Shown here piece after piece: positions 2,908 to 63,517 of a stretch of DNA of 64,000 nucleotides (position 1 is the stretch's first letter; each line of letters opens with the position of its first letter). The position numbers and the translations under genes were made by a program. Location of the stretch: IMG/VR virus record IMGVR_UViG_3300027899_000001, positions 62,001 to 126,000 of that record; one strand, written 5' to 3'. Below the pieces are notes generated by a model that saw only the letters and a program-made list of their open reading frames with translations, was not told the origin of the DNA and made no database searches.

Positions 2908-2941
2908 GTTAATTCTTTATTTATTTTATATATTTAATATT

Positions 2942-5212: not shown

Positions 5213-5563
5213 TTATATATTATAGATCTTATTACTTGACACCGAAATTTTCTTTGATTTTGGCATATTTCCATATAATTTTCTCCATCCTTTTGCGAAA
5301 CCGTTTTTAATTATTTGTGTAAAATATGCGAATGCATTTTGAGATTTTGCCGGATCATATCCTCGCCAATATTGAAAACAATCCATAACTGCAAATGATA
5401 TACAATCTTCTCGATCTTCAGGATAAATATAGTTTAATTTAGTAGAAAATTTCTTTGCCATTAACATAAACATATCCAAAGCAATTGGAGTTAATTTATC
5501 AGCTTCTTTAGATTTTATTATTTCGTTTCGCAGGTCGGCATTCTTTACATGATGTAGTCCCAT
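5213..5563 (-). CDS. gp55: Late-transcription sigma factor, T4 gp55-like (short)
   Basis: EDREDCISFAVMDCFQYWRGYDPAKSQNAFAYFTQIIKNGF. Confidence 0.8.
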   Translation of the reverse strand: MGLHHVKNADLRNEIIKSKEADKLTPIALDMFMLMAKKFSTKLNYIYPEDREDCISFAVMDCFQYWRGYDPAKSQNAFAYFTQIIKNGFAKGWRKLYGNMPKSKKISVSSNKIYNI

Positions 5564-5652
5564 AATTTCAATTTTAATTAATTTTTAATTTATATGAACA
5601 AAACGCGACATTGTTTTGTCACGTTTAATTTTTAATTAATTTTTAACACTTA

Positions 5653-6153
5653 TCATTCATTTTTTTCCTTTGGTTCAATAGGAGTAATAATAATGTTTGG
5701 GTCTAATTTAGGAGGCTTAATTTTTTCTTCAGGTATTTTAGGAATAAGTTGAAGTTTTAATTCATCCATATATTGTACAAAATCTTTCTTTGTAAGAGAT
5801 TTATCATTAGCAAGATATTTAATCCAAGATTCTTTCATAAAATTTTGATTATCTATTATAAGATTTTGATTTTTTACTACATCATTTGTTTTTAATTTAA
5901 TTTCCCATACAATGACTATCAAAGAATCTAATTTTCTACTATCTGTAAGTTGATTAAATTTTATTTCAGTAACATCTTTTTTAAGAGATATTTTTTCATT
6001 ATCTTTTCTTTCTGACTTTACACCAAGCGTCCATACAAAGGTCACTGCGGTTACTACAGTCATGAAGTAACCCCAATAATTTTTTATAAATTCACCAAAC
6101 GGATTGGTTACTTTAATAGGTATCGTCGGTTTAACCGGTGTTTGTTTAGCCAT
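5653..6153 (-). CDS. Hypothetical protein, N-terminal TM segment plus coiled-coil
   Basis: YWGYFMTVVTAVTFVWTLGV; operon-packed ORF. Confidence 0.55.
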   Translation of the reverse strand: MAKQTPVKPTIPIKVTNPFGEFIKNYWGYFMTVVTAVTFVWTLGVKSERKDNEKISLKKDVTEIKFNQLTDSRKLDSLIVIVWEIKLKTNDVVKNQNLIIDNQNFMKESWIKYLANDKSLTKKDFVQYMDELKLQLIPKIPEEKIKPPKLDPNIIITPIEPKEKNE

Positions 6154-6365
6154 TAGTCTAATGCATCTATTACTTCATCTAAAAGAGCTTTAATAGTAGG
6201 ATCTGTTATTTGATATTTAGCTCTAACTAATTTTTTAATTAATAATTTTTTTCTTCTGAAATCTCCTTTAAAATTAAGAGTTATTCCAAATACAACGCCT
6301 TCAAGATTGTCTCCTTTTTCAAAATCTTCATCTGAATAAATTTCATTAATAGTTTTTGCTCTCAT
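6153..6365 (-). CDS. Hypothetical protein
   Basis: Tightly packed ORF in a minus-strand operon. Confidence 0.55.
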   Translation of the reverse strand: MRAKTINEIYSDEDFEKGDNLEGVVFGITLNFKGDFRRKKLLIKKLVRAKYQITDPTIKALLDEVIDALD

Positions 6366-6366
6366 A

Positions 6367-7011
6367 TTATACTGATAATGTTCTTAACGTTCCTTTAGGC
6401 ATTGTTTGCATTTCTTGTTGTCCATCAGGAGTTTTACGAATGATTTTAACTGCATCTGCATCTCCAATAGCATTTGAATAATCAACAGCGTTAATAAGAA
6501 TATTTTCAAGAGCATCTTCATTGCCCTCATCTATAATGACTCCCGGAACATAGTTGTCTTCATTTGCAAAATCATTAAGATCTTCAAATATTCTAACTTG
6601 TGATTTAGGCATAAATGAAACACTTCCTTCTATAAGAACTTTTACGTTATCATCATCTTTTGCTTTTTGCCACAAGTCATATCTAACAAAACAATCACTA
6701 AGTTTAATAGGAACATTTCCCATATAAACTCCGCATTTAATATATTGTTCAAATAAAAGTTTTTGAGTAACTTCATCAAATTTGAACTGTTTTTCAGGTG
6801 TTATTTCAGGCGTTTCTTGTTTCTCAGTTTTGAGTTTAGAAGGATCAACTAATGATGTGTTTCCTTGAATTTGAACAATAACTTGTCCATTGATTTCTCC
6901 AATCACAAATCCTTTTTGTCCATCAAGTTTTACTTTATCTCCTATTTGGACGCATTCATTAAGTTGTAAATATTCTACTTCTTGTTTTTCTTCATCTAAT
7001 ATATTATCCAT
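6367..7011 (-). CDS. Hypothetical protein (N-terminal KOW/SH3-like segment)
   Basis: IGDKVKLDGQKGFVIGE motif; operon-packed. Confidence 0.55.
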   Translation of the reverse strand: MDNILDEEKQEVEYLQLNECVQIGDKVKLDGQKGFVIGEINGQVIVQIQGNTSLVDPSKLKTEKQETPEITPEKQFKFDEVTQKLLFEQYIKCGVYMGNVPIKLSDCFVRYDLWQKAKDDDNVKVLIEGSVSFMPKSQVRIFEDLNDFANEDNYVPGVIIDEGNEDALENILINAVDYSNAIGDADAVKIIRKTPDGQQEMQTMPKGTLRTLSV

Positions 7012-38609: not shown

Positions 38610-38610
38610 A

Positions 38611-38660
38611 ATGTAAATATAATACAAATATTTGACAGAAAAAAATATTATGATAAAAAT
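38611..38660 (-). promoter_or_regulatory. Repeated early-promoter module
   Basis: plus-strand atgtaaatataa...tttgacagaaaaaaa shared with 57306 and 58127. Confidence 0.6.
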
Positions 38661-51533: not shown

Positions 51534-53267
51534 TTATTCTTTTTTAAGAAGTAAAAAATCAGTTTTTTTCAAATCTTTAGCAAAAATTTCTTGTAATTTT
51601 TCATTTCTACATACTATTAAAATATGATTTTCTGAACAAATTAATTTTTCATTATTAATTTCTATTTCAATATATTTTTCTTTTTTTGTTTTTATTATTT
51701 TTTCGATAGTTTTATATTCATTGGTGTGTGTTAAAATTTCATCATTATAGGTTAAATCTTTAATTTTTTTAAATCCATCTTTTGTAATAATTAAATGGTC
51801 TTCATCAAGACAATCTTCATCTGTAGCAATTATTATTTTGTCATAAACTGGTAATTTATCTTTGCCGGGTTCTATTTCAAGAATGCTCATTATATCTAAC
51901 CATTCAGCATTTCCTGTTAAATCTGATAATTTTCTTGCATTTTTAACCTTTCCTTTAAGAGCATATACTGCGTCAGTTTCAGAATCTCTTGCTTGTTTTA
52001 CTGAACCTGCTGCTGAAAGTCCTTCAGTAATATATATGCATCCCTTGTATTTTGAAGCAGGACTAAATTTATCAGATATCTTTCTTTTCGATTGCTTCTG
52101 AGCCTTTCTAATCTTAACTAAATTTTCATTATGGAGTCTATCTTCTATAGATTTTTCGATGCTTCTTGCTATATCAGATTTACTCAAGAATCTTATTAAC
52201 TTACTATGAAAAGATTCTTTCATCAATTCTTCTATTTCTCCACGACCTGTTGCAAATTTTGTTTTATTTTGGTCTGCAAATCTCATTAATTGCGACGGAA
52301 GATTAAGAGATATAAGAGTTTCATAGAAATGGTGAGCTAAATTATACTTAAAATATTCATTACCCCAATCATTAACTACTTTCTGATGTATTCCTGTACA
52401 GTTAGATCCATTAACAAATGATAAAGAACAAGAATTTTCATATGCTTCCCAAAGATATATTGTCCCCATATTGTTAGTTACAGTTATATGATCTTTAGGA
52501 ATAAAATCTGTCGTTATATCTATATCAAATTGTTTTCCTTCTTTTATAAAATATCCTTTGAAATCTAATTTATTAATAATAGGATCGTTCTTTATTAAGA
52601 AGTATTTGAATGAAAGATAAGTTGTTATTAAATCTATATCCCATTTAAGATCTAGAAATATTTTCTTTGATGGAATAAAGGTTATTTTAGTTCCAAGTTT
52701 ATCTGAAGATTCTTTTTTTCTTATTTCTTCATTTACTACTACGAAATCATCCCATGTAAATTTTACATAATGAGTTTTATTAACAGTAGTTACTGCGAAT
52801 TTCTCAGATAAAATATTAGTTACGGCAGCACCTAAACCAAAAGTTCCAAGTATATTAGTTGATGTATCAGTAAAATTAGAACCTGCGTGAAGTTCTTCAA
52901 GAGCAGTTCTTACTACATTTTTCTTTGTTTTACTATGTTTTTTAGCTGCATCATGAAATCCTAAACCTTCATCTATCACAATTATTTCATTATTATCAAG
53001 ATTAACTTTAACTGTAACATTTTTCATTTTACCCTTACATCGTTTAGCTTCATCTAAAGAATTTTCTAAAATTTCATAAAATAATTGATAAAATCCAGGT
53101 GAATATTTTTTTTCTAATGAAATTAATTTATTATTAATAACAAGCGGATATTTACTATCTTCTATTTCAGATATTTGCCCAACATAAAGAGTAGGCCTTA
53201 ATCGTATAGCGGTAAAATTATCTAACGCTATTATTTCTTTTGAATTTCCTGTATTATTTTTTAACAT
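51534..53267 (-). CDS. Topoisomerase II B-type (gp39/GyrB-like) N-terminal part ending in a 92-aa IntN
   Basis: EILENSLDE, DEGLG, GTFGLGA (GHKL), TEGLSA, ALKGKV, IIIATDED|CLDEDH. Confidence 0.9.
   Translation of the reverse strand: MLKNNTGNSKEIIALDNFTAIRLRPTLYVGQISEIEDSKYPLVINNKLISLEKKYSPGFYQLFYEILENSLDEAKRCKGKMKNVTVKVNLDNNEIIVIDEGLGFHDAAKKHSKTKKNVVRTALEELHAGSNFTDTSTNILGTFGLGAAVTNILSEKFAVTTVNKTHYVKFTWDDFVVVNEEIRKKESSDKLGTKITFIPSKKIFLDLKWDIDLITTYLSFKYFLIKNDPIINKLDFKGYFIKEGKQFDIDITTDFIPKDHITVTNNMGTIYLWEAYENSCSLSFVNGSNCTGIHQKVVNDWGNEYFKYNLAHHFYETLISLNLPSQLMRFADQNKTKFATGRGEIEELMKESFHSKLIRFLSKSDIARSIEKSIEDRLHNENLVKIRKAQKQSKRKISDKFSPASKYKGCIYITEGLSAAGSVKQARDSETDAVYALKGKVKNARKLSDLTGNAEWLDIMSILEIEPGKDKLPVYDKIIIATDEDCLDEDHLIITKDGFKKIKDLTYNDEILTHTNEYKTIEKIIKTKKEKYIEIEINNEKLICSENHILIVCRNEKLQEIFAKDLKKTDFLLLKKE
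51537..51812 (-). mobile_element. IntN (92 aa) of a split intein
   Basis: CLDEDHLI block A; CSENH block B. Confidence 0.88.
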
Positions 53268-54198
53268 AATTTTCTATAAATTCTTTATAGTTTTTATTTA
53301 AGATAAGAATATAATTATATCCTAATTTTTTTGTTGCTTTTTCTTTTTCAAAAATTTCATTTTCATTCATTTTTAAGGTATAAGATCCTTTTATTTCTAT
53401 TACTAAATTTTCAGATGGTAGATAAAAATCAGAATGATATACTCTATTTTTTCCATCAAGGTTATATTTTATAGACGGCCCATTTTGCATATCATTAAAT
53501 AAAGTATAAAAATTTTCTAAAAAGTCAAATTCATATGACGCTTGATACGTTAAATTACTATCTTTATATTGATGTAATAGCATCCTAGTTTTAAATGCTT
53601 TATCATATATTCCTTTATCTTGTAAAGGATTTTCGACTCCATATTTTTTTAAATAATGTTGTTTTAAATTATTTTGAATAATTTTGCTAGAATATGGATT
53701 TTTTGTTCCATAATTTTTTTTACATGTTTTTTCTGCTTTTAATTTAACATCTTTATTAGCTAATGTACATGCAGTTCCATATTTTTTTATATTAGTATTT
53801 TCAAGTTTATCTCTAACTATTTTTGATTTATTTGGATTATCTACTCCATAATTTTCTTTCCACGTTTCTTTCATTTTATTTTTACAATCTTCTCTTTGAA
53901 AATTGTTTTCTACTCCATAAGTGTGTAATAATGTTTCTTTTCGAGTTTCATTTGCAATTTTTATACTATGATTATTACAACAACCTTTAATATATCCATA
54001 AGCTAAACTTTTAAACTTAGTTTGTTTATTACATATTTTACATAATTCTTCGTTATCTTCTTTTAACCATTTATCAAAATATATTTTAGTGTTATCGTGC
54101 TTTCGTTGAATATGTTTACTTAAAGACATTAAATTTTTACATATTTTTTGGCATTCTTCACAAATATAAAAATCATTTTCTTGTTTAAATTTTTTCAT
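53254..54198 (-). CDS. Free-standing endonuclease, family copy 5
   Basis: CEECQK..H..RKH; YGVENNFQ; YQASYEFDFLENFY...YHSDFYLPSENLVIEIK. Confidence 0.75.
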   Translation of the reverse strand: MKKFKQENDFYICEECQKICKNLMSLSKHIQRKHDNTKIYFDKWLKEDNEELCKICNKQTKFKSLAYGYIKGCCNNHSIKIANETRKETLLHTYGVENNFQREDCKNKMKETWKENYGVDNPNKSKIVRDKLENTNIKKYGTACTLANKDVKLKAEKTCKKNYGTKNPYSSKIIQNNLKQHYLKKYGVENPLQDKGIYDKAFKTRMLLHQYKDSNLTYQASYEFDFLENFYTLFNDMQNGPSIKYNLDGKNRVYHSDFYLPSENLVIEIKGSYTLKMNENEIFEKEKATKKLGYNYILILNKNYKEFIENYVKK

Positions 54199-54306
54199 AA
54201 ATATATTTTTAATTTATATATCTATGAGTGCCAAAAGTTTTTGTTATATTTAGAGTTCTTCTGTTCTATCGCCATATGTTTTTTGTATATTATATAAGGT
54301 TTATAA

Positions 54307-54534
54307 TTAAAGTTTTATGAAACGATTCATGCCTGCTATTATTGATAACCAATCATAGTATTCATCTCGTTCTTCTTCTGTATCAAACCAATAGCATATA
54401 TTTCCATGATTAAATGTAAAATCTATTCCATACTGAAATACTTGAGTACCTTTAACTCCTTCATATAATGTTTTGTTAAAATAATCTACTTGATTTAAAT
54501 TAATGCTAGCACAATTTTCTTTAGTTATCCACAT
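54307..54534 (-). CDS. Hypothetical protein
   Basis: Small ORF in an accessory cluster. Confidence 0.55.
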   Translation of the reverse strand: MWITKENCASINLNQVDYFNKTLYEGVKGTQVFQYGIDFTFNHGNICYWFDTEEERDEYYDWLSIIAGMNRFIKL

Positions 54535-54538
54535 AGCT

Positions 54539-54814
54539 TTATTTTTTTAAATGTTTGCTTATTTTACTTAAATCTGGTTCTTTTTGTTCATAATAAACTA
54601 TTCTTCTTCTTTTTCTTGGTTTAGTTTGAGTAATAGATTCTTTACCATTTTCAATTATACTAAAATAATTGAGTATTCCTACAAAGGCACTAAATCCTGT
54701 TGCCCAACCTATAAAATTCATATCGTTTTTAAAGAAAAGTATAGTCATAATTATTAAAGCTATTACGACTATTAGATAAAGAGTTCTTGTTAATGACATA
54801 TTACTTTGTTTCAA
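54539..54814 (-). CDS. Small 2-TM membrane protein
   Basis: LYLIVVIALIIMTILFF and IGWATGFSAFVGILNYF. Confidence 0.6.
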   Translation of the reverse strand: MKQSNMSLTRTLYLIVVIALIIMTILFFKNDMNFIGWATGFSAFVGILNYFSIIENGKESITQTKPRKRRRIVYYEQKEPDLSKISKHLKK

Positions 54815-54836
54815 TAATTATTATATAATTCTATTT

Positions 54837-54956
54837 TTAATTCGTTCTTTCATGTTTATGTTCTTTTTTATGTTTAACTAATAAAATTATAAATCCCACA
54901 CATAATCCTATTGCTGTTATCATCATTGCCATTAAAAAAGTGTCAATAGTTTCCAT
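54837..54956 (-). CDS. Small single-TM protein, 39 aa (METIDTFLMAMMITAIGLCVGFIILLVKHKKEHKHERTN)
   Basis: Hand-translated; 1-nt overlap with the stop of 54956-55249. Confidence 0.55.
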   Translation of the reverse strand: METIDTFLMAMMITAIGLCVGFIILLVKHKKEHKHERTN

Positions 54957-55249
54957 TATTTTATAGGTTTAAGTTTCTTATAAGTTTCGATATTTCTTTC
55001 ACACCCATCTTTATATGAACTCCAACTATCATCTCTATAAATATTTCCATTATAAGAACTTGCGAAAAAAGGAGTCCATCCAAAATATTTACGATAAACT
55101 TCTGAACGATAAAATATAATTTCACCTTTGATTTTTTCTCTTATTCTAAATTCTTCTGATTTAGGAAACCAATTTTTATGAAGTCTATTAAGAATTCCTA
55201 TACCTATGAATATAAAAAGAATTATTAAAATAGTTATAAACTGTGTCAT
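54956..55249 (-). CDS. Small protein with N-terminal TM segment
   Basis: FITILIILFIFIGIGIL. Confidence 0.55.
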   Translation of the reverse strand: MTQFITILIILFIFIGIGILNRLHKNWFPKSEEFRIREKIKGEIIFYRSEVYRKYFGWTPFFASSYNGNIYRDDSWSSYKDGCERNIETYKKLKPIK

Positions 55250-55312
55250 TTTTTTAAATTTTAAGTTAGAAATTAATTAATTATTTTTCATAAATTATTA
55301 AAAGTTTTGTTT

Positions 55313-56353
55313 TCATATATTTAGAAGTTTATTAAATTGTGCATACTGTTTATCTAAAATTAAAATATAGTTATATCCTTCTTTTTTTACTGCGTATTCT
55401 TTCTCTTTAATTTTTTCATCTTTTTTAAAAAAATAGTTGCTTTTTATTTCTATTATTAAGTTTAAATCGGAAATAAAAAAATCGGGAAAATAAACGTGAT
55501 TATTATTTTCATATACATAATTTATTTTTGGCCCATTTAATATATTAACTTTTTCATAATAATTTTCTAAAAAATCTAATTCATATGTACCTTGATAATT
55601 TAAACTAGTATCTTTATATTGGTTAATTTGTAATCCTGATTTGAACCATTTTAAGCGTATTTCATCACTTTGAAATACATTTTCTACTCCGTATCTTTCT
55701 AAACATGTTTGTTTTATTTTATTTCTTACATCTTTTGATTTAAAGGGTGTATCTGTTCCATAATGTTTTAAACAAGTTTGTCTTGATTTTTCTTTAACAC
55801 TTTTAGACTGTATATGATGTTTATTACCATAACGTATTAACGATGTATTTTCTCCTTTTTCTCTAACTTCTTTATTTTTCCAAGGATGATTTTTGCCATA
55901 TCTTTTTTTATTTGTTTCTTCTGTTTTATTTCTTATTTCTTTTGATTTAAATGGGGTATCAACTCCAAATTTTTTTATACAAGTTTGTTTTGATTTTTCT
56001 CTATTACTATAATTTTCATCGCCGTATTTTTTGTTTTTTGTTTCTTTGCATTTATTTTTTATTAAATCATTCTGAAATACGTTTTCTACTCCATAAATTT
56101 TTAAATTCGTTTCCTTTTTTGTTTTTTCTTTTAATATTTTTAAACATCTTTTGTTTTTACATGTTAATTGATAACCTTTTTGAATAGATATAAATACTGT
56201 TTCTTTTCCACAAATTTTACATATACCATCACTATTATTTTTTATATACTTATCATAATAATGTTTTCCATTATGGCATTTTCTAATATGATGACTAAAA
56301 GATCTCCATGAATATAAAATTTTATTACATTCTTTACATTTAAAGTTTTCCAT
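55313..56353 (-). CDS. Free-standing endonuclease, family copy 6
   Basis: CKEC..HH.RKCH; YGVENVFQ repeats; YQGTYELDFLENYY...YFPDFFISDLNLIIEIK. Confidence 0.75.
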   Translation of the reverse strand: MENFKCKECNKILYSWRSFSHHIRKCHNGKHYYDKYIKNNSDGICKICGKETVFISIQKGYQLTCKNKRCLKILKEKTKKETNLKIYGVENVFQNDLIKNKCKETKNKKYGDENYSNREKSKQTCIKKFGVDTPFKSKEIRNKTEETNKKRYGKNHPWKNKEVREKGENTSLIRYGNKHHIQSKSVKEKSRQTCLKHYGTDTPFKSKDVRNKIKQTCLERYGVENVFQSDEIRLKWFKSGLQINQYKDTSLNYQGTYELDFLENYYEKVNILNGPKINYVYENNNHVYFPDFFISDLNLIIEIKSNYFFKKDEKIKEKEYAVKKEGYNYILILDKQYAQFNKLLNI

Positions 56354-56415
56354 AAATAGTTTATTATATATATTATAGAAAACTAAGATATTCTGCTATA
56401 TTCCAAAGAATTTTG

Positions 56416-57273
56416 TTAAATTGAAGAAAAATAACTTTCAGCTATTGTCCAAAGAGTCTTATTAAATTCTATATTACGAGTGGCATTTGTTATTCCACGA
56501 GGTCTTGTTCTACGACCATTTACAGTATGTCTTTCGAATTCACCTTTAACCAATCTTTCCTGAACTATATTAAATACTGTCCAAAGATCTTCTTTTTTAT
56601 CTTCTCCTCTTAAAGGCTCAACTATCTGTGTTGGATTCATTATTGCAGTAACTTTCTTAAAATCTACAGTTCCATCAGGCTGTATAAAAACATGAGGTTC
56701 ACGATTAGCTATAGCCTTTATAACGAATTCTTCTCTCTGATCGTTATTAAGAACTACTTGTTGCATATCACTTATATGCTTACCTATTATAGAATACTGT
56801 TCTGCTACCACAGACATAAGTTGTTTAAGTTCTTCAACGTCTATTCCAACGTGACGAAGTTTAACTGAGGTGAACATTCCAGGCATCGCCACTATAAGTC
56901 CATTGGTGCAAACTAAACGGAAAATACCCATATGCCCCATTGCAGGAGATCCTCCATTATGAGAGTTGTCAAGGATAAACTGTGGTTTAACGTTATCTCC
57001 TTTAAGATTCATAAAATCAAAGCCAAGATCGGGGTTGAAGAAACGTATCATATGACGGGCATATGGGCTTACACCATTCTGTTTGGCAAATGCAGGAAGC
57101 CAACCAGTTTTTTCAAAAGCGGCAATAAGTTCATCTGTTGGAACAAATGAATATCGAGTTGAAAGTTTAGGACTTTCATGAGTAGAAAAAGCTGCGGGAA
57201 CACGAATTTTTAATTCGTCAATACTTGTTGCTTTGTAACCAATCGATGTTAAGGGATTTTCAATGTGTGCCAT
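56416..57273 (-). CDS. DUF932-family protein
   Basis: RYSFVPT, RHMIRF, NSHNGG...GIFRLVCTNGLI. Confidence 0.75.
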   Translation of the reverse strand: MAHIENPLTSIGYKATSIDELKIRVPAAFSTHESPKLSTRYSFVPTDELIAAFEKTGWLPAFAKQNGVSPYARHMIRFFNPDLGFDFMNLKGDNVKPQFILDNSHNGGSPAMGHMGIFRLVCTNGLIVAMPGMFTSVKLRHVGIDVEELKQLMSVVAEQYSIIGKHISDMQQVVLNNDQREEFVIKAIANREPHVFIQPDGTVDFKKVTAIMNPTQIVEPLRGEDKKEDLWTVFNIVQERLVKGEFERHTVNGRRTRPRGITNATRNIEFNKTLWTIAESYFSSI

Positions 57274-57305
57274 GACTTTATGTATTAATGTTTTAACTTC
57301 TATAG

Positions 57306-57368
57306 TGTAAATATAATACTTTAATTTGACAGAAAAAAATTATTTACAGATTATTTTCAAATTATTTT
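57306..57368 (-). promoter_or_regulatory. Repeated early-promoter module
   Basis: tgtaaatataa...tttgacagaaaaaaa..tttac.gattattttcaaattatttt, near-identical to 58127-58190. Confidence 0.65.
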
Positions 57369-58101
57369 AATAATCTTTTACACAACGAACTGACATACCT
57401 GCTTCTTTAGGATATGGATAATCTGTTTCAAAGGATCCATATAAATTTTTAAAATATTTATGCAATATGATATTCCATCCTTTATTTTCTACTGGTGCAA
57501 ATCCATTTTGTGTTACATATTCCGTTGATGTCCACCAAAAACCAATACGTTCAAAATTAAGAAATTCTCCTGTATAATCTATAAAACCTCCAGGAAGCGC
57601 AGTAAACCCACTTTCATTAGTTGCTCCAACGTTTGGTTCTTCCCAATGCTCAAATCCCGCCTCTTTTAACTTACCGCCTGCAATACTGTCACCACCCAAA
57701 TAATCTGCTAATTGCATCCATTCATTATATGAAGGAACATGCCAACCTGTCGGACATAATTTTCCAGTATTAACTGCATGCCAATTATATAATTTTCCAT
57801 ATGTTTCTGAATTGATAATGTTTCCATTACATTCAGTATATGCAGGAGTAATAGAAGTACTCCAGATTTCCGCATTGTTGACAAAAGGAATAGGCGTTCC
57901 ATCATTGAAAGTTGTTGTTTTCAAATTTTCTACCATCCATATTTGATAGCCTATTGTTTTTTTAGTATAGTTATTACCATCAATATCAACTATTGACGAA
58001 TCAATTGGTTTAACATATACAATTTCTATTTTCGTACAGCTAATTAACAAAATAAAAACTATTGTTAATAAACTGATGACAAATAAATTTAATTTTTTCA
58101 T
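57367..58101 (-). CDS. FISUMP-domain (Fibrobacter succinogenes major paralogous domain) lipoprotein
   Basis: Lipobox LISC; DIDGNNY..IG.QIWM.ENL, YGKLYNW, LCP.GWHVPS, GF.ALPGG, WWTST, SVRCVKD. Confidence 0.85.
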   Translation of the reverse strand: MKKLNLFVISLLTIVFILLISCTKIEIVYVKPIDSSIVDIDGNNYTKKTIGYQIWMVENLKTTTFNDGTPIPFVNNAEIWSTSITPAYTECNGNIINSETYGKLYNWHAVNTGKLCPTGWHVPSYNEWMQLADYLGGDSIAGGKLKEAGFEHWEEPNVGATNESGFTALPGGFIDYTGEFLNFERIGFWWTSTEYVTQNGFAPVENKGWNIILHKYFKNLYGSFETDYPYPKEAGMSVRCVKDY

Positions 58102-58126
58102 ATCAATAATTTTAAGTTAATCTGTA

Positions 58127-58190
58127 ATGTAAATTTAATCATAATTTTTGACAGAAAAAAATCTTTTACGGATTATTTTCAAATTATTTT
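58127..58190 (-). promoter_or_regulatory. Repeated early-promoter module
   Basis: atgtaaatttaa...tttgacagaaaaaaa...gattattttcaaattatttt. Confidence 0.65.
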
Positions 58191-58215
58191 TTAAAATATA
58201 TAAAATAAAAGAGCT

Positions 58216-58593
58216 ATGATACTACCTGGCAATGAAGAAAACACCCTTCCACAAATTGTATATGAAGAAATGGATGGAACTATATCAATTAAAGGAAGAT
58301 CAATTTCTCCTGAAGTTGAAGATTATTTTTCTGATTTTTTACCTTACTTAAAGGATTGTATTGAAAAGAAACCAATGGATATGAAAATCAGTTTTGATTT
58401 CGAATACTTTAATACAAAAACTAGTAAGTTATTAATGCAGCTACTTTATACTGTCAAACCTTTAGAAGAACAAGGATTTAAGATTGATATTACATGGACG
58501 TATGAAGAAGGCGATGATGATATGAAGGACATCGGTGAAGATTATGAAGATCTTGCACAGATTAAATTCACATTTATTGAAAAGCCCGAATAG
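58216..58593 (+). CDS. SiaC/DUF1987-family protein
   Basis: ISIKGRSISPE..DYF, FEYFNTKTSK.L..L, ITW.YEEGDDDM.D.GED; late promoter at 58194-58210. Confidence 0.75.
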   Translation: MILPGNEENTLPQIVYEEMDGTISIKGRSISPEVEDYFSDFLPYLKDCIEKKPMDMKISFDFEYFNTKTSKLLMQLLYTVKPLEEQGFKIDITWTYEEGDDDMKDIGEDYEDLAQIKFTFIEKPE

Positions 58594-58599
58594 GGCTTT
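58581..58599. terminator. Bidirectional terminator hairpin
   Basis: AAAGCCC-GAATA-GGGCTTT between convergent genes. Confidence 0.65.
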
Positions 58600-58607
58600 T
58601 CCTTTTA

Positions 58608-59030
58608 TTAGAAAAGAGCTTTAGCTTTACATTTTGTAGATTTCCAATTTTCATAATCCCATGTGAGTGCATCATGACACACAATATTATGATTTAATAT
58701 ATCTTTAGCAGTAATAATATCCTCATCTGAAAGAGACGGGAGGAGCTCTAGAAGACGTTGCCTCATTTCCTTCACATTATCTTCTTGCAATTCAACTGCA
58801 AAAATAGTAGATAAGGCTTGTAAAGAATCATGACCTTTTTCTAATTTTCGAGATAAAATCTGCACTAAAAAATTTCCGTTGCCACCTGCTGGATCTATAA
58901 AAGTTTTCAACGGATTATCCCAAATTTCCTGTGGGATTTTATCAAGCATTTCGTTTATAAGTTCAGGACACGTAAATTCTTCTGCTGTTGATTTTTTTCT
59001 TTGTTTTCGTTTTAATTCAAGATCTGTCAT
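58608..59030 (-). CDS. N6-adenine methyltransferase fragment with SAM-binding motif I only; ends KAKALF
   Basis: EEFTCPELINEML, FIDPAGGNGNFL, IFAVEL..DNV; no NPPY. Confidence 0.75.
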   Translation of the reverse strand: MTDLELKRKQRKKSTAEEFTCPELINEMLDKIPQEIWDNPLKTFIDPAGGNGNFLVQILSRKLEKGHDSLQALSTIFAVELQEDNVKEMRQRLLELLPSLSDEDIITAKDILNHNIVCHDALTWDYENWKSTKCKAKALF

Positions 59031-59032
59031 TA

Positions 59033-59197
59033 TTATTTTACATCATTTACGTCAACATAAAACAATTCATTGTGATTATCTTTATCATATATGTATAGTA
59101 TACCATTTTTTATTTTTATATAATAAACTGTATTTCCGTTATTAACATCATATACATAATAATGTTTTTCTTCTTTAATAGTAACTGAGTTTTCCAT
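59033..59197 (-). CDS. Small hypothetical protein, 54 aa (MENSVTIKEEKHYYVYDV...)
   Basis: Hand-translated; fills the gap between the two methyltransferase ORFs. Confidence 0.5.
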   Translation of the reverse strand: MENSVTIKEEKHYYVYDVNNGNTVYYIKIKNGILYIYDKDNHNELFYVDVNDVK

Positions 59198-59207
59198 ATT
59201 AAAATTT

Positions 59208-60404
59208 TTAATAATATTTAGGTATATTTTTTTCTATAAATTCTATTTCTTCTTTTTTTAGCTCAAAGCTGTTATATAGTTTTTCATCTGTCCATTCTTG
59301 AGAAAAATCTAACCAAGGAATAGAAGACAATTCACTTCCTTCTTGAGACATTGCTATCTTATATATTGATAATGAAAATCTTGCAAAATTAGTTTTCATA
59401 TAATTCAAAAGATTTTCTGCTTCTTTTTTTGTTTTAAATCCAAAATATACTTTTTCTTTTTTTCTTGTTACTATTGTATTTTGATCGAAAAAAGTATAAA
59501 AATCATCAGCAACCCATTTATTTGTAGTTTTAGAAGTATTTCCACGAAATCTAGGAATATTAACATAATATTTCCCGTTTTCTCTTATATGTTGGCTTAA
59601 ATTATTAGTTTTACAATATAACAAAATTTTATTTCGTAATGATATAAAATCTGATGTTACATCATGCATGTGCACATCTTTTATATCATTAATTTTATGA
59701 GTAGTTTTAAAAATGTCGTTATATAATATTACTTCAGTATTATTTTTTTCTTTATCAAAAAAGGATATTGACATAGGAGCCTGTAAATTTATATCTTTAA
59801 AATATTTAATAGAATTAAATAAGTCTATTTTAATTATTTTACTAAATATGCTATAATAAAACAATTCATTTGTTCTTTTATTTACTGCTCGTTGATTTAA
59901 GTATATTGTAGCGGGATGCACAGCAATAACATATTTTTTTGATATATTATATGCAATATTTAAAAAATCTATATAAAGTTTTCCTTTGTATGGAGGGTTT
60001 AAAATTACAACATCAAATTTTGGCATCTTTTCTTCTCCTTCTATTTGTTTAGTATTATATGAATATATAACTACTTTGTTTTGATCTATACCCATTCCAA
60101 TTGCTGCTTTTTTCTTTAATTCACACGGTGTCATAAACCAAACATTTTTTAAATCTCTTATTTTTTCTTTAATTGTCCATATAAATTCTAAATTGAACAT
60201 AACCATAATATTCATATCACTATTTAATTCTGGAAGTTTATTTATCATTTCTTCACAAAGTTCAAAAGGAGTATACACATTATGAGTATCTGTACTTCTT
60301 TTTAGAATTTCTTTAATTCTTAATATAACTTCTTTTCTTTCCATGTTTATGTAAATAAAATTAACCAAATTATAGTCCAAATTACATATATAATGGGTAA
60401 CCAA
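59208..60404 (-). CDS. Eco57I/TaqI-like gamma N6-adenine methyltransferase with NPPY and TRD-like C-terminus but degenerate motif I
   Basis: VYTPFELCEEM, KFDVVILNPPY, LYIDFL, VIAVHP; start may be MERKE at 60344. Confidence 0.75.
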   Translation of the reverse strand: MVTHYICNLDYNLVNFIYINMERKEVILRIKEILKRSTDTHNVYTPFELCEEMINKLPELNSDMNIMVMFNLEFIWTIKEKIRDLKNVWFMTPCELKKKAAIGMGIDQNKVVIYSYNTKQIEGEEKMPKFDVVILNPPYKGKLYIDFLNIAYNISKKYVIAVHPATIYLNQRAVNKRTNELFYYSIFSKIIKIDLFNSIKYFKDINLQAPMSISFFDKEKNNTEVILYNDIFKTTHKINDIKDVHMHDVTSDFISLRNKILLYCKTNNLSQHIRENGKYYVNIPRFRGNTSKTTNKWVADDFYTFFDQNTIVTRKKEKVYFGFKTKKEAENLLNYMKTNFARFSLSIYKIAMSQEGSELSSIPWLDFSQEWTDEKLYNSFELKKEEIEFIEKNIPKYY

Positions 60405-60410
60405 AAAAAT

Positions 60411-61952
60411 TTAAGAAAATTTAATAACTTCTTCATCACTCATATTTTTTATTTTTTCCTCTAATCTAAAGTCTTCTATCGCTATTTTATCTGCAATTTC
60501 TTTTTCTTCTATATTATGCTGTATACTAACAAAAACGTCAAATAATGCTTTTACTTTAATATCAGCAACATTTGTTCCTGCCAATGGTATTTTAACTGTA
60601 TGCCCATTATTGTATGTTATTTCAACATCTTCACTGGCATCAAATCCAGTTTCTCGCAAAGCTTCTATAATTGATTGAATTTTTTCAGTTAAATCTTCTC
60701 CTATTATGCCATAACAAGGAACTATTATCCAAGCATATGGTTTCTTAAAGTCTTCAAGATCATCATATTTTATAACTCCTGAATACAAGTTTTTCCTGTC
60801 ATCTTTTTGTAATCTACTTGCTCTTCCTAATGTTTGTAAAAATTTACCCGTTGTCATAGTGTTCATTGGCATAATTCCTGTTATACCTGGAACATCTATG
60901 CCTTCAGATAATATATTTATGTGAAAAATGATTGCGTCATCTTTATCATCCATACCTTGTAATTCTTCAAGAAATTTTTCACGTCTAACAACTTCTCCAT
61001 TAATACGTGGGCTAAATGCTGAAGATATATCAAATATTTTTAAATTGTCTCTTAATGCTAAAAATTTCTGCATCTTCGGATGTGTCACGTACTTATTCAG
61101 ATCTTCTGAACCGCCAGTAACAACAAGTAATTTTGCTCCATTATTACAATTCATTTTATGTTTAATGAAAGCATCTTTAATAGCATTCACATCTATATCT
61201 ATCTTATCGTATACGTCTTCATCATTTTTGTTTTCAAGGTCTGTAAATTGTAATCTCGGACGTAATATTTCACCAGCGATAATCATTTCTAATGGAGTTT
61301 TTTCATAAATGATAGGACCAAATAGATCGCTGTTATTCATTCCTAATCCTTTATCTGAAAAAGTTTCTTTCAATGTTGCAGTGAAATAATATTTACGTAA
61401 TGAGTTGAATTGTTTCACTGCGTTTACTTCATTTTCTAAACATATCCAACTAAATTCCTTTGAAACTAAGTATTGTGCTTCATCACATAAAGTCATATAA
61501 ACTGGAATTTGTGCATCCATAATTCTTTCTGAAGAATCATAAGTACCAAAAATAATCAAAGGAACGTTTTCAAGTCTTGCTTTTTCATATTCTTCAGCTA
61601 TTTTTATATATGAAGTCGTTGATGTTAATTGTCTAAATGGCAAATCAACTGTCCACATTCTTTTTGTATCATCAACTGTTTTTCCTGAATGTACTATAAG
61701 ATAATGGCAATCCTTTTTTTGTAATAATAATGTTTCTTTTATAACATTATAAAGTTGATTACATAAAATAATTCTTGGTGCCAAAATAACAAAAACTGGA
61801 ATTTCTTGATGTTTAAATCCAGCATCAATATTATTAGAAATAGCATATGATTCTATATATGTTTTTCCTGATCCTGTTGGAAGATGAATAATGCCTTCAT
61901 TACTATTTTCAATAGCATTAAGTGCTTCTATTTGATGTTGTCTAAGTTTCAT
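60411..61952 (-). CDS. SF2 helicase-like ATPase (restriction-enzyme Res/Type ISP-like)
   Basis: LRQHQ, LPTGSGKT, CDEAQ, FTAT, LSEGIDVP, QTLGRASR. Confidence 0.85.
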   Translation of the reverse strand: MKLRQHQIEALNAIENSNEGIIHLPTGSGKTYIESYAISNNIDAGFKHQEIPVFVILAPRIILCNQLYNVIKETLLLQKKDCHYLIVHSGKTVDDTKRMWTVDLPFRQLTSTTSYIKIAEEYEKARLENVPLIIFGTYDSSERIMDAQIPVYMTLCDEAQYLVSKEFSWICLENEVNAVKQFNSLRKYYFTATLKETFSDKGLGMNNSDLFGPIIYEKTPLEMIIAGEILRPRLQFTDLENKNDEDVYDKIDIDVNAIKDAFIKHKMNCNNGAKLLVVTGGSEDLNKYVTHPKMQKFLALRDNLKIFDISSAFSPRINGEVVRREKFLEELQGMDDKDDAIIFHINILSEGIDVPGITGIMPMNTMTTGKFLQTLGRASRLQKDDRKNLYSGVIKYDDLEDFKKPYAWIIVPCYGIIGEDLTEKIQSIIEALRETGFDASEDVEITYNNGHTVKIPLAGTNVADIKVKALFDVFVSIQHNIEEKEIADKIAIEDFRLEEKIKNMSDEEVIKFS

Positions 61953-62539
61953 ATTTTTATGGTATTTAAACTTTTTTTAACTAAATCTCTAAATGAATTC
62001 CAAAAAAGAATATTATTATCAACTAATTCTCTAAGATTTTCATATCCTAAACATCTTACTTTTTTTGTAAACATTTCATCTTCTGTAAAATAATGTAAGC
62101 CTTCTGCTGTCGTAATAATAAGCATATTATTTTTACTTTTAGGATCTACATCATATCTTAATACAGATGCTGAAGTAAAATTACTTAAATGATCTTGGTT
62201 AGCTGTTAATAACACTCTATTATTTGAACGATATTTAACTTGTACTGTAGCGGGTTTTCCGTCTATTCCTATACCTTTTCCATCTACTCCAGTATCATCA
62301 CTTGTAATGGGAATATATTTTCCTATAGCTATGCGATTATCTGCAGGAGATAATTTAATTAATGCTTCTACAAATAATTCAAATCCATCTCCTTTATATT
62401 TTTCAGGCTCATATCTATTAGGAAATAATAATGATTGTTGTTCAAGACGAGTACAAAAAGTTGAAAGCTTTTTTACATTTACTAGTAATCCATTTATATC
62501 ATGTGAATTAAATAAAAAAGGATGAATTAAGGTTTCCAT
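61949..62539 (-). CDS. Mrr-like PD-(D/E)xK restriction endonuclease
   Basis: KGDGFELFVE, DDTGVDG, VQVKY; ATGA-coupled to the helicase. Confidence 0.7.
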   Translation of the reverse strand: METLIHPFLFNSHDINGLLVNVKKLSTFCTRLEQQSLLFPNRYEPEKYKGDGFELFVEALIKLSPADNRIAIGKYIPITSDDTGVDGKGIGIDGKPATVQVKYRSNNRVLLTANQDHLSNFTSASVLRYDVDPKSKNNMLIITTAEGLHYFTEDEMFTKKVRCLGYENLRELVDNNILFWNSFRDLVKKSLNTIKI

Positions 62540-62565
62540 TGTTTATGTTTTTAACTTATTCTGTA

Positions 62566-62636
62566 ATGTAAATATAAACAAAATATCCGAAACAAAAAAA
62601 TTATTTCGGATATATTTTAACAATTTCTTAATTTTT
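62566..62636 (-). promoter_or_regulatory. Repeated early-promoter module with 10-bp inverted repeat
   Basis: atgtaaatataa; ATATCCGAAA/TTTCGGATAT (62583-62613); attttaacaatttcttaattttt shared with 63005-63027. Confidence 0.65.
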
Positions 62637-62640
62637 TTCT

Positions 62641-62937
62641 TTATTTAAGTCTCAATGACATCTTTGCAGCTGCCAAATACGTGTTTGTTACGAATTTCTG
62701 CATCATATTAAGATTGTAAATTCTTGCCATATCATCCTTATATCTATTTGCTGCCATAGGACTTACATGAGTAGCAGGGTCATCAAGAATTCGAGTCACT
62801 TCAGCTTTTAACTGAATAAGATTATACTTAGTAATGTTTTTAATAAGTGTTTCAAGCTGAGCTCCTACACTTTTCGATGCCGTTACTGTTCTAGTAAGGT
62901 CCGGCATGTTTCGATTTAATTTTTTATCTTTATACAT
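62641..62937 (-). CDS. Hypothetical protein (start MYKDKK)
   Basis: Downstream of the promoter module at 62957. Confidence 0.55.
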   Translation of the reverse strand: MYKDKKLNRNMPDLTRTVTASKSVGAQLETLIKNITKYNLIQLKAEVTRILDDPATHVSPMAANRYKDDMARIYNLNMMQKFVTNTYLAAAKMSLRLK

Positions 62938-62956
62938 AATCTTATTTTTAATTACA

Positions 62957-63027
62957 ATGTAAATATAAAACAAAAATCCGACAAATAAAAATATTTATCG
63001 GATTATTTTAACAATTTCTTAATTTTT
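62957..63027 (-). promoter_or_regulatory. Repeated early-promoter module with inverted repeat
   Basis: atgtaaatataa; AATCCGAcAAATA/TATTTaTCGGATT; 23-nt block identical to 62614-62636. Confidence 0.65.
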
Positions 63028-63517
63028 ATTCTATAATATACATTTTTACAGAATCTCCAAAGAAATCTGAATGTTCTTTCACGTAATCAAGTATTCTTAA
63101 AAATTTACTTTTATTATTAGGTTTATATGAATCCTCTAATTCAAACTCATATTTTTCTCTACATTTTTTCAACATTTTTACACTTATCCACCATAACTCT
63201 TCTGGATTTTTAGAATTATTTATTATTAAATACTTTGCTTTACTTTGTTCTAAAGAATCGTTTTTATTATTATCTATTACAGTATATGTACTTCCATATT
63301 TTACATCTACAGGAAGTATTAATTTGCCTAAAAACGGTGTTAATTCATCAAATATAAAATAATAATCTATTTTATCATTCATATCTTCTTGCAAAGTTGC
63401 TTCTTCGCTATGAACTATATAACCTCTTTTTCTTAAAAGTTCAATAGCTCTTTTAGCAACTAATGGCTGATTATAAATTCCAAGCTGTTGATCTGCAGTG
63501 CTTCCGTATGTTGACAT
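63026..63517 (-). CDS. Hypothetical protein, possible PD-(D/E)xK nuclease fold
   Basis: EDMNDKIDY...VDVKY. Confidence 0.45.
   Translation of the reverse strand: MSTYGSTADQQLGIYNQPLVAKRAIELLRKRGYIVHSEEATLQEDMNDKIDYYFIFDELTPFLGKLILPVDVKYGSTYTVIDNNKNDSLEQSKAKYLIINNSKNPEELWWISVKMLKKCREKYEFELEDSYKPNNKSKFLRILDYVKEHSDFFGDSVKMYIIE

What the first reader, a model, noticed from the sequence alone, without database searches (positions are those of the whole stretch)
58608..62539. Type ISP-like restriction-modification system encoded as separate genes in a jumbo phage
Seen: under one early-promoter module, in transcription order: Mrr-like nuclease, SF2 ATPase (ATGA-coupled), NPPY methyltransferase with TRD-like tail, small ORF, methyltransferase fragment. 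Known: Type ISP enzymes (LlaGI, LlaBIII) carry Mrr nuclease, SF2 ATPase, gamma methyltransferase and TRD in this order in one polypeptide. Inference: a multi-subunit version used for host DNA degradation, exclusion of competing phages, or self-methylation.
Basis: partly seen in the sequence, partly recalled or inferred. Interest (0 to 1): 0.65.

Follow-up and report, generated by a model that had tools for sequence, protein, structure and literature searches.

The report
Split Type ISP-like restriction enzyme in phage
A 405-kb freshwater phage carries, as one operon of separate genes, the nuclease, DNA motor and adenine methyltransferase that lactococcal Type ISP restriction enzymes hold in one chain. 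It also carries a conserved small protein that is only the cofactor-binding half of a methyltransferase, and the same module recurs in many large phages.

Summary
On the minus strand, between a hairpin/promoter cassette (62645-62540) and a terminator (58601-58579), lie five genes:
- g1: Mrr-family nuclease.
- g2: SF2 ATPase, overlapping g1 by ATGA.
- g3: gamma-class NPPY adenine methyltransferase with a TRD.
- g4: a 54-aa ORF, not conserved elsewhere.
- g5: 140 aa.

The Type ISP reading is supported by homology.
- g1 has the Mrr signature with LlaGI's spacing, and its model best matches the LlaBIII nuclease domain (Z 9.9).
- A g2-family profile hits LlaGI and LlaBIII first in the PDB (about 1e-25).
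- g1, g2, g3 and g5 co-occur in about 20 independent viral or metagenomic loci, in different orders.
- They also occur fused: g2+g3, and single chains g1-g2-[g5-like]-[g3 C-half] of about 1250 aa.

- g5 is not a fragment. It is a highly conserved stand-alone protein with motifs X, I, II and III and a canonical SAM loop.
- g3 has that loop deleted (N[LP]EF) but keeps NPPY, so methylation probably needs g5 in trans.

No enzyme activity, recognition site or biological role has been tested. PADLOC and NCBIfam models do not recognise the module. I rate it a new variant of a known kind.

The parts
62540..62645 (-). Upstream regulatory cassette. It has a conserved box (TTAAGAAATTGTTAAAAT), a 13-bp-stem hairpin with a T-run (62613-62583), then an AT-rich promoter-like box (TTTGTTTATATTTACATT, 62582-62565) about 25 nt before the g1 ATG.
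   Evidence: Sequence read. Hairpin called. The cassette is repeated at 63035-62930 with 84% identity. The box is found 7 times in the window at up to 3 mismatches, against 2.3 expected. Function as a promoter is inferred, not shown.
61949..62539 (-). g1: stand-alone Mrr-family PD-(D/E)xK nuclease, 196 aa. Motif I is G52-F-E54. Motif II is D82-T-G84-V-D86. Motif III is Q100-V-K102.
   Evidence: The motifs are invariant in 34 homologues. D86 to Q100 has the same 14-residue spacing as LlaGI D78 to Q92. AF2 model pLDDT 92.5. Best structural match is LlaBIII residues 12-169, Z 9.9, rmsd 3.4 over 133 residues; this is tied with the Mrr-like folds AF1548, AspBHI and MspJI, with the Avs4 N-terminus just below at Z 8.1. 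PHROG match is phrog_7683, unknown function.
60411..61952 (-). g2: SF2 helicase-like ATPase, 513 aa, overlapping the g1 stop by 4 nt. Walker A GSGKT, DEAQ box, TAT, and QxxGRxxR are present.
   Evidence: Pfam ResIII 2e-12 and DEAD 3e-11. phrog_16 DNA helicase. A family profile hits LlaGI at 7e-26 and LlaBIII at 1e-25 first in the PDB, covering both RecA lobes; next come XPB at 5e-20 and HsdR at 6e-12.
59208..60344 (-). g3: gamma-class N6-adenine methyltransferase-like protein with a C-terminal TRD, 378 aa. NPPY (116-119) is invariant. The motif I glycine loop is replaced by F-N-L-E-F (50-54). Met107 coincides with the start of NPPY-only homologues.
   Evidence: Pfam N6_Mtase. AF2 pLDDT 92.1 with a complete Rossmann fold plus TRD. 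Best matches are CamA Z 19.1 over 325 residues and M.TaqI Z 17.7; LlaGI scores Z 16.6 and LlaBIII Z 16.1 over the methyltransferase core only. AGGAG lies 8 nt before the Met107 ATG.
59033..59197 (-). g4: 54-aa ORF between g3 and g5. It is lineage-specific and its significance is unknown.
   Evidence: It has no family hit apart from a weak PADLOC MTase_III hit (E 0.0068). It was found only in the records of this same phage among all loci searched. Other loci carry unrelated ORFs of 110-167 aa, or nothing, in this position.
58608..59030 (-). g5: stand-alone N-terminal half of a gamma-class methyltransferase, 140 aa. It has motif X (FTCPELINEML), a canonical motif I (FIDPAGGNGNF), motif II (VELQED) and motif III (CHDALTWDY). 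Motif IV is absent.
   Evidence: 240 homologues of similar length; the 120 listed are 57-70% identical. Alignment motifs. g5 matches the C-terminal third of phrog_11371, while g3's C-half matches that profile's first two thirds. The two parts are fused in permuted order in Aeromonas phage CC2 gp189. In the single-chain relatives the g5-like segment occupies the methyltransferase N-half position.
58579..58601 (.). GC-rich hairpin terminator between the convergent g5 (minus strand) and the SiaC-family gene (plus strand).
   Evidence: 9-bp stem with 5 GC pairs and a T-run. The sequence was read.

Best explanation
The operon encodes a multi-subunit, phage-borne relative of Type ISP restriction-modification enzymes.

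Proposed mechanism (inferred unless marked otherwise):
- g3 recognises a short, probably asymmetric DNA site through its TRD and flips the target adenine into the NPPY pocket.
- g3 has lost the SAM-binding loop. g5 supplies that half of the methyltransferase in trans, so N6-adenine methylation of the phage's own DNA needs both proteins.
- On unmethylated sites, such as the host chromosome or a co-infecting phage, g2 is proposed to dock on g3 through its C-terminal region, as in the natural g2-g3 fusions. It then hydrolyses ATP and translocates double-stranded DNA.
- The Mrr nuclease g1 is translationally coupled to g2 and fused to it in relatives. It nicks and cleaves the DNA, by analogy with LlaGI/LlaBIII on collision of two converging complexes.

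Shown here: domain identities, intact catalytic motifs, homology of g1 and g2 to Type ISP, co-conservation, and fusions.

Inferred: physical complex formation, methylation, ATP-driven cleavage, and the biological role (host DNA breakdown or exclusion of rival phages).
For: - Nuclease. g1 has the Mrr motifs E54, D82-x-G-V-D86 and Q100-x-K102, invariant in homologues and with LlaGI's spacing. Its model best matches the LlaBIII nuclease domain, Z 9.9.
- ATPase. The g2-family profile's best PDB hits are LlaGI and LlaBIII, 7e-26 and 1e-25, over both RecA lobes.
- Methyltransferase. g3 folds as a complete gamma-class methyltransferase with TRD, and NPPY is invariant.
- Co-conservation anchored on g1. 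Among g1-anchored loci with enough flank, g1, g2 and g3 are together in all but one, and g5 in all but two (L019 and L022). Examples are cyanophages S-CAM7 and Bellamy with different gene orders, L008, L009, L011, L015, L018, L020, L021, L025, L028 and L030.
- Co-conservation anchored on g5. L066, L075, L077, L079, L083 and L088 again carry all four genes.
- Fusions. L018 has g2+g3 in 893 aa. Fusions of g1+g2 run to 716-780 aa. P0369 and P0389 have g1, g2, a g5-like N-half and a g3 C-half in 1251-1257 aa. L023 is at least 1380 aa.
- Conservation pattern. It fits a restriction-modification system with a variable specificity subunit. Mean column identity is 58% for g1, 65% for g5 and 35% for g3, and some loci carry tandem g3 paralogues.
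- g5 and g3's C-half form one protein in a permuted fusion, Aeromonas phage CC2 gp189.
Against: - No biochemical or methylome data exist for any member.
- The complex prediction could not be run, so no subunit contact has been tested.
- g3 is predicted to fold completely on its own, including a degenerate N-half. How g5 would reach its active site is therefore unexplained.
- g5 also accompanies large relatives that keep a canonical motif I (L039-L043, L072). Simple complementation cannot be its whole role.
- g3's methyltransferase plus TRD resembles orphan or Type II enzymes (CamA, M.TaqI) more fully than it resembles Type ISP.
- Many phages carry g5, g3 and a g2-like helicase without any g1 nuclease. 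The core function may therefore be helicase-assisted methylation, with restriction as an add-on.
- A Type ISP coupler domain was not identified.
Confidence: 0.62

Rival explanations
1. The module is a helicase-assisted self-methylation system for evading host restriction. On this reading g2 makes g3/g5 a processive or replication-coupled methyltransferase. The g1 nuclease serves recombination, repair or packaging rather than restriction.
For: Pairs of g5 with a g2-like helicase, and sets of g5, NPPY-only g3 and helicase, occur without any g1 in many cyanophage-like contigs (L081-L109). A g2-like helicase was found in 425 phage records, 414 of them cyanophage-named, while g1 was found in only 17.
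Against: Wherever g1 is present it lies next to g2 or fused to it. Its catalytic motifs are invariant. g1 and g2 each find Type ISP as their closest solved relative. Other large relatives carry a different nuclease, T5orf172/GIY-YIG-like, in the same N-terminal position. That pattern argues that a nuclease is an integral effector.
Confidence: 0.15
2. The module is a modification-dependent (Type IV-like) nuclease-motor. On this reading the SAM-blind g3 is a reader that flips and senses already-methylated adenines in host DNA, for example Dam-type marks. g5 would have a regulatory or SAM-sensing role.
For: g3 lacks the glycine loop of motif I in almost all split modules yet keeps an invariant NPPY pocket. 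Several close structural neighbours of g1 (MspJI, AspBHI, and the Mrr family itself) are modification-dependent enzymes.
Against: g5 keeps canonical SAM-binding motifs I-III under strong conservation. The single-chain relatives have a fully canonical methyltransferase in the same position. NPPY-only g3 halves paired with g5 look like a true split methyltransferase.
Confidence: 0.1
3. The genes are functionally unrelated neighbours: a replication or repair nuclease-helicase beside an orphan methyltransferase and a decayed methyltransferase fragment.
For: Jumbo phages carry many orphan methyltransferases (PMC7824862). L022 has g1 and g2 with no adjacent methyltransferase.
Against: The genes are co-conserved across divergent phages with shuffled order. 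Fusions join g1-g2, g2-g3, g5-g3 and all of them in single chains. g5 has 240 full-length homologues (the 120 listed are 57-70% identical), which is not decay.
Confidence: 0.04

Closest known systems
[quoted passage not shown]
   Same: - The functional order is the same: Mrr-family nuclease, SF2 ATPase, gamma-class N6-adenine methyltransferase, TRD.
- g1 shares the D-x-G-h-D ... Q-x-K signature and spacing, and LlaBIII is its best structural match.
- The g2-family profile hits these two enzymes first.
- Single-chain relatives of g1 and g2 with the whole architecture exist in phage contigs.
   Different: - Here there are four separate proteins instead of one chain of about 1570 aa.
- The methyltransferase is itself divided. 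g3 has a deleted SAM loop and g5 is a separate SAM-binding half.
- The methyltransferase plus TRD is closer overall to CamA and M.TaqI.
- No coupler domain was identified.
- The module is encoded by lytic-type large phages rather than lactococcal plasmids.
- No activity has been measured.
Gamma-class N6-adenine methyltransferases with TaqI-type TRDs (CamA, M.TaqI, M.BseCI; Eco57I/MmeI Pfam families)
   Same: The g3 model superposes on CamA over 325 of 378 residues, Z 19.1, and on M.TaqI at Z 17.7. The NPPY motif is present and the TRD is C-terminal.
   Different: Those enzymes bind SAM through their own motif I. g3 has N[LP]EF in its place and is accompanied by a separate protein carrying motifs X and I-III. 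g3 is also wired to a nuclease and a motor.
Circularly permuted phage methyltransferases of phrog_11371 (for example Aeromonas phage CC2 gp189)
   Same: These are homologous to g3's C-half plus g5, joined in the order NPPY-TRD-X-I-II-III. This shows that the two pieces make one enzyme.
   Different: They are single-chain orphan methyltransferases. The g1 and g2 models found no partner in the 10-kb CC2 region.
Classical Type I (HsdR/M/S) and Type III (Res/Mod) systems
   Same: These are multi-subunit ATP-dependent restriction-modification enzymes with an SF2 motor, a PD-(D/E)xK nuclease and a gamma- or beta-class adenine methyltransferase. HsdR is a weaker hit of the g2 profile, 6e-12.
   Different: In Type I and Type III the nuclease and motor are one polypeptide. 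Type I has a separate HsdS. None has a stand-alone SAM-binding half-domain. PADLOC Type I and Type III models match only marginally or not at all.

Membership tests
Type ISP restriction-modification enzymes | All activities in a single polypeptide | tested here: not met
   Here there are four separate ORFs with stop codons between them. Relatives in other phage contigs are single chains of 1228-1257 aa.
Type ISP restriction-modification enzymes | N-terminal Mrr-family nuclease with motif I E, motif II D-x-G-h-D and motif III Q-x-K | tested here: met
   g1 has E54, D82-T-G-V-D86 and Q100-V-K102, all invariant, with spacing as in LlaGI. Best fold match is LlaBIII residues 12-169, Z 9.9.
Type ISP restriction-modification enzymes | SF2 helicase-like ATPase of the LlaGI/LlaBIII type | tested here: met
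   The profile of 16 g2 homologues hits LlaGI at 7.2e-26 and LlaBIII at 1.1e-25, its two best PDB hits, with both RecA lobes aligned.
Type ISP restriction-modification enzymes | Coupler domain between the ATPase and the methyltransferase | tested here: inconclusive
   g2 residues about 390-513 lie beyond the aligned ATPase lobes, and g2 joins g3 directly in the L018 fusion. No model of g2 was made, so the fold of this region is unknown.
Type ISP restriction-modification enzymes | Gamma-class N6-adenine methyltransferase with SAM-binding motif I and NPPY, followed by a TRD | tested here: inconclusive
   NPPY and the TRD are in g3. g3's own motif I loop is deleted. A canonical motif I is on the separate g5. 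LlaGI and LlaBIII methyltransferase cores align at Z 16.6 and 16.1, below CamA at 19.1.
Type ISP restriction-modification enzymes | ATP-driven translocation with cleavage on head-on collision, and methylation of one strand of an asymmetric site | not testable with these tools
   This needs biochemistry and a methylome.
Mrr-like PD-(D/E)xK nucleases (Pfam Mrr_cat) | Significant match to the family model | tested here: not met
   No Pfam hit at E up to 0.1, and the profile search against PDB sequences found nothing. Membership rests on motifs and fold.
Split or trans-complemented DNA methyltransferase | The two halves are encoded separately, each lacks motifs the other has, and they are fused in relatives | tested here: met
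   g5 has motifs X and I-III only, while NPPY-only g3 homologues start at MPKFD (L007, L035, L036, L044, L056, L091-L099). Fusions are seen in CC2 gp189 and in P0369/P0389. Physical complementation is untested.
Known anti-phage defence systems in PADLOC (BREX, DISARM, MADS, Type I-IV restriction-modification) | Match to the system's marker models | tested here: not met
   g1 and g3 match no model. g2 has only partial weak hits (PbeA 1e-10 over 70 residues). g5 has weak hits to mad2 and MTase_II. NCBIfam gives no hit above its cut-offs.

The most novel reading that the evidence does not exclude
The small g5 protein may be a portable cofactor half of a methyltransferase, used in trans by interchangeable NPPY-TRD halves. 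Several such halves can sit in tandem, giving one phage several specificities.

In this phage, full-length g3 is SAM-blind and would arm the nuclease-motor complex for restriction only. A shorter g3 product starting at the conserved Met107, which is exactly where NPPY-only homologues begin, would pair with g5 to methylate. Restriction and modification would then be carried out by different assemblies built from the same gene. This would be a new way of organising and regulating a restriction-modification enzyme.
Probability: 0.3. Interest if true: 0.75.

Novelty: new variant of a known kind. Interest (0 to 1): 0.62.

Why it matters
- Type ISP enzymes are known as single-chain bacterial and plasmid defence proteins. 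This finding shows a sizeable, phage-confined sister group. The g1 nuclease family alone has 556 representatives at 50% identity. Members range from single chains to fully split operons.
- No current defence or annotation model recognises these modules.
- If active, they are restriction systems used by large lytic phages. Their targets would be the host chromosome or rival phages. This bears on how T4-like phages without modified bases tell self from host DNA.
- The stand-alone SAM-binding half-domain, g5, is a natural example of a methyltransferase divided between strands beta3 and beta4. It often serves loci with several catalytic/TRD halves.
- That arrangement is of interest for enzyme evolution and for engineering programmable methyltransferases.

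Tried and rejected
- Nucleotide search of the region against 50,697 phage records found no match.
- Single-sequence PDB searches with g1, g3 and g5 were uninformative. The g1 profile against PDB sequences also found nothing; the fold search was needed.
- I considered reading g3 and g5 as one interrupted or recoded gene, because they share a frame. I rejected this: 12 stops of mixed type lie between them, and g5 homologues are stand-alone genes elsewhere. No alternative genetic code was invoked.
- I rejected g5 as a decayed fragment, given 240 conserved full-length homologues.
- I looked for g3 and g5 paralogues elsewhere in the 405-kb genome that g5 might serve. None were found.
- A pattern scan for g1 relatives in 185,579 bacterial and archaeal species genomes found none. 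The scan depends on two peptide patterns, so this is weak evidence of absence.
No verdict on binding exists.
- phmmer of the L023 single-chain ORF against the PDB was too insensitive to show Type ISP.
- The sequencing-run search found only the probable source, a freshwater metagenome, and no RNA run.
- The jumbo-phage comparative review PMC7824862 mentions permuted M.EcoKI-like methylases and nuclease-coupled modification enzymes, but not this module.

Full report
**Where and what.** The window is bases 62001-126000 of a 405,016-bp IMG/VR virus record with direct terminal repeats. The only sequencing run holding the region is a freshwater metagenome, probably its source. The region is AT-rich, 22-30% GC. 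Five ORFs lie on the minus strand in this transcription order:
- g1, 62539-61949, 196 aa.
- g2, 61952-60411, 513 aa, overlapping the g1 stop by 4 nt.
- g3, 60344-59208, 378 aa from the ATG used by public gene calls; the open frame reaches a TTG at 60404.
- g4, 59197-59033, 54 aa.
- g5, 59030-58608, 140 aa.

**Operon boundaries.**
- Upstream of g1 is a cassette made of a conserved box, a 13-bp-stem hairpin with a T-run, and an AT-rich promoter-like box.
- The same cassette, 84% identical, precedes the upstream gene.
- A GC-rich hairpin terminator follows g5, facing a convergent SiaC-family gene.
- One transcription unit is therefore plausible. 'Early' timing is not shown.

**g1 is an Mrr-family nuclease.**
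- Pfam finds nothing and PHROGs gives only phrog_7683, unknown function.
- An alignment of 34 homologues shows invariant G-F-E54, D82-x-G84-V-D86 and Q100-x-K102.
- Smith et al. (PMC2790908) define the LlaGI/Mrr signature as follows:
  - a motif I glutamate preceded by a small residue;
  - a motif II catalytic aspartate, with a second aspartate four residues upstream linked by a glycine (D74/D78);
  - a motif III Q-x-K (Q92/K94).
- g1 has all of these, with the same 14-residue gap between the catalytic aspartate and the glutamine.
- The AlphaFold model is confident, pLDDT 92.5.
- Foldseek gives only PD-(D/E)xK nucleases, none at E of 0.001 or better.
- Re-alignment ranks the N-terminal nuclease of the Type ISP enzyme LlaBIII first, at Z 9.9 over 133 residues with rmsd 3.4. 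It is tied within one Z unit with other Mrr-like folds (AF1548, AspBHI, MspJI); the Avs4 N-terminus follows at Z 8.1.

**g2 is an SF2 ATPase of the Type ISP kind.**
- Pfam ResIII and DEAD score above their cut-offs.
- As a single sequence, g2's closest PDB matches are XPB and MDA5.
- A profile of 16 family members instead puts LlaGI (7.2e-26) and LlaBIII (1.1e-25) first. XPB follows at 5e-20 and a Type I HsdR at 6e-12. The alignment covers motifs of both RecA lobes.

**g3 is a gamma-class adenine methyltransferase with a TRD but without a SAM loop.**
- The model (pLDDT 92.1) has the full Rossmann sheet, including strands beta1-3, followed by a C-terminal domain.
- It superposes best on CamA (Z 19.1, 325 residues) and M.TaqI (Z 17.7).
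- HsdM-type cores, LlaGI (Z 16.6) and LlaBIII (Z 16.1) align over about 200 residues only.
- N116-P-P-Y119 is invariant.
- Where motif I should read D-P-x-x-G-x-G-x-F, g3 and nearly all module-type homologues read h-h-x-N-[LP]-E-F. The loop is about four residues shorter, and N51 and E53 are invariant.

**g5 is not a fragment.**
- It has motif X, a canonical motif I (D-P-A-G-G-N-G-N-F), motif II and motif III, and then stops just before where motif IV would begin.
- It has 240 homologues of 77-245 aa; the 120 listed are 57-70% identical.
- It matches positions 283-382 of phrog_11371, while g3 residues 129-386 match positions 3-254 of the same profile.
- In Aeromonas phage CC2 gp189 the two parts are one protein in permuted order, NPPY-TRD-X-I-II-III.
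- g3 and g5 share a reading frame here, but 12 stops of mixed type separate them.
- The genome has no other g3 or g5 copy.

**Co-conservation.**
- g1 relatives in cyanomyoviruses S-CAM7 and Bellamy sit beside a g2-like helicase, a g3-like protein of about 417 aa and a g5-like protein of about 134 aa. The two phages have different gene orders.
- Metagenome contigs of up to 280 kb, with T4-type portal genes nearby, show g1-g2-g3-(x)-g5.
- I built HMMs for each gene and scanned all fetched loci.
- Nearly every g1-anchored locus with enough flank had all four functions. The exceptions are informative:
  - L019 has a g3 with a canonical motif I and no g5.
  - L022 has only g1 and g2.
- Anchoring on g5 in 80 viral loci gave three patterns:
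  - Complete modules again (L066, L075, L077, L079, L083, L088).
  - Many loci where g5 directly follows one to three tandem NPPY-only g3 genes of 250-330 aa that begin at M-(P)-K-F-D.
  - Many loci where g5 follows giant proteins of 1100-1400 aa; the scanned examples combine a ResIII helicase, an Eco57I-type methyltransferase, or both, and in L045 and L050 an N-terminal T5orf172/MUG113 nuclease-like domain.
- g4 was found only in this phage.

**Fusions.**
- L018 and L024 encode an 893-aa g2-g3 fusion.
- The exhaustive profile search with g1 found 556 representatives. Most are about 200 aa. Some are 716-780 aa (g1+g2), and some are 1076-1257 aa.
- Pfam shows ResIII/DEAD and then N6_Mtase/Eco57I/MmeI in the longest ones, P0369, P0389 and P0446.
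- In P0369 and P0389 the order is g1 (about 1-200), g2 (about 205-705), a g5-like segment with canonical motif I (about 835-965), then NPPY and the g3 C-half. That is the Type ISP architecture.
- These single-chain forms sit in phage-like contigs.
- In the single chains, the g5-like segment occupies the methyltransferase N-half. This is the strongest evidence that g5 is the functional SAM-binding half in the split systems.

**What remains unexplained.**
- g3 keeps a degenerate N-half that the model packs into the sheet. How g5 would act on it is therefore open.
- g5 also follows large relatives that keep a canonical motif I (L039-L043, L072).
- One observation may bear on this. Met107 of g3 is conserved in at least 90% of homologues, is exactly where NPPY-only homologues start, and has AGGAG 8 nt upstream. 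Other genes here lack such a motif. An internally started short g3 could be g5's partner. This is speculation.

**Comparison and novelty.**
- PADLOC and NCBIfam do not recognise the module.
- A pattern scan of 185,579 prokaryotic species genomes found no g1 relative, though the sensitivity of that scan is limited.
- The jumbo-phage comparative review does not describe the module.
- It works like, and is homologous in nuclease and motor to, Type ISP enzymes. It fails the defining 'single polypeptide' criterion and has a divided methyltransferase.
- I therefore file it as a new, phage-borne, multi-subunit variant of that kind rather than as a member.
- Restriction activity, methylation, site specificity and biological role are inferences.

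Noticed in passing
window 62540-62645 and 62930-63035 (minus strand): Two adjacent intergenic regions share an 84%-identical cassette: the box TTAAGAAATTGTTAAAAT, a 13-bp-stem hairpin with a T-run, then TTTGTTTATATTTACATT. It looks like a combined terminator and promoter unit, reminiscent of the promoter-stem-loop cassettes of T4-type phages (comparison from memory). Looser copies of the last box lie at 58126-58143 and 38610-38627.
   Followed up: partly
window 59990-60080 (g3 Met107, ATG at 60026-60024): A Met conserved in at least 90% of g3 homologues coincides with the first residue of the NPPY-only homologues. It is preceded by AGGAG 8 nt upstream, although the annotated starts of g1 and g3-g5 have no such motif. 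This may be an internal translation start.
   Followed up: partly
window 51534-56353 (minus strand): Two homing-endonuclease-like ORFs (53254-54198 and 55313-56353; phrog_3339, phrog_12131) lie next to a topoisomerase II large-subunit ORF (51534-53267). The first overlaps its start. Endonuclease invasion around the topoisomerase gene is possible.
   Followed up: no
window 56400-58600: A patch with higher GC (0.29-0.34 against about 0.22) holds a Fib_succ_major-domain ORF (57367-58101, minus strand), a SiaC-family ORF (58216-58593, plus strand) and a phrog_12094 ORF (56416-57273). These may be recently acquired host-like genes. They may hint at a Bacteroidota or Fibrobacterota host.
   Followed up: no
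L114 1749-2996; contig of P0446 (no DNA held): Two contigs that carry single-chain nuclease-helicase-methyltransferase relatives also encode an adenylosuccinate-synthetase-like protein a few kb upstream. In phages this can be PurZ of the 2-aminoadenine pathway. That would be odd beside an adenine methyltransferase.
   Followed up: no
L023 9929-14068: This single-chain relative is at least 1380 aa and is cut by the contig end. It has a LAGLIDADG-like stretch (residues 957-1008, E 6e-4, below the Pfam cut-off) between the helicase and the methyltransferase. This may be an intein or an inserted endonuclease domain.
   Followed up: no
L015 and L017 (g1 2640-3212, g2 5291-6814, g3 7412-8275 plus 8376-8618 in L015): In this relative about 2 kb separates g1 from g2, and g3 is in two ORFs of 288 and 81 aa. 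The cause could be an inserted element or a disrupted gene.
   Followed up: no
L045 2646-6203; L050 5144-9217; L039-L043: Giant proteins of 1100-1400 aa sit directly upstream of g5 homologues. In L045 the protein combines a T5orf172/MUG113 (GIY-YIG-like) N-terminus with a ResIII helicase and an Eco57I-type methyltransferase. This is a second single-chain nuclease-motor-methyltransferase architecture with a different nuclease. L050 shows only a weak T5orf172 match, at the Pfam cut-off (E 8e-4).
   Followed up: partly
window 13867-15579 (minus strand): A second, unrelated SF2 helicase (phrog_2488, 1e-107) lies elsewhere in the window. It is not part of the module.
   Followed up: no
L033 (Prevotella phage Lak-C1) 5190-7423: Lak megaphages encode a g5 homologue about 40% identical to g5. 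In the standard code, only pieces of a g3-like gene lie beside it. This may be an effect of their alternative genetic code (recalled, not tested here).
   Followed up: no
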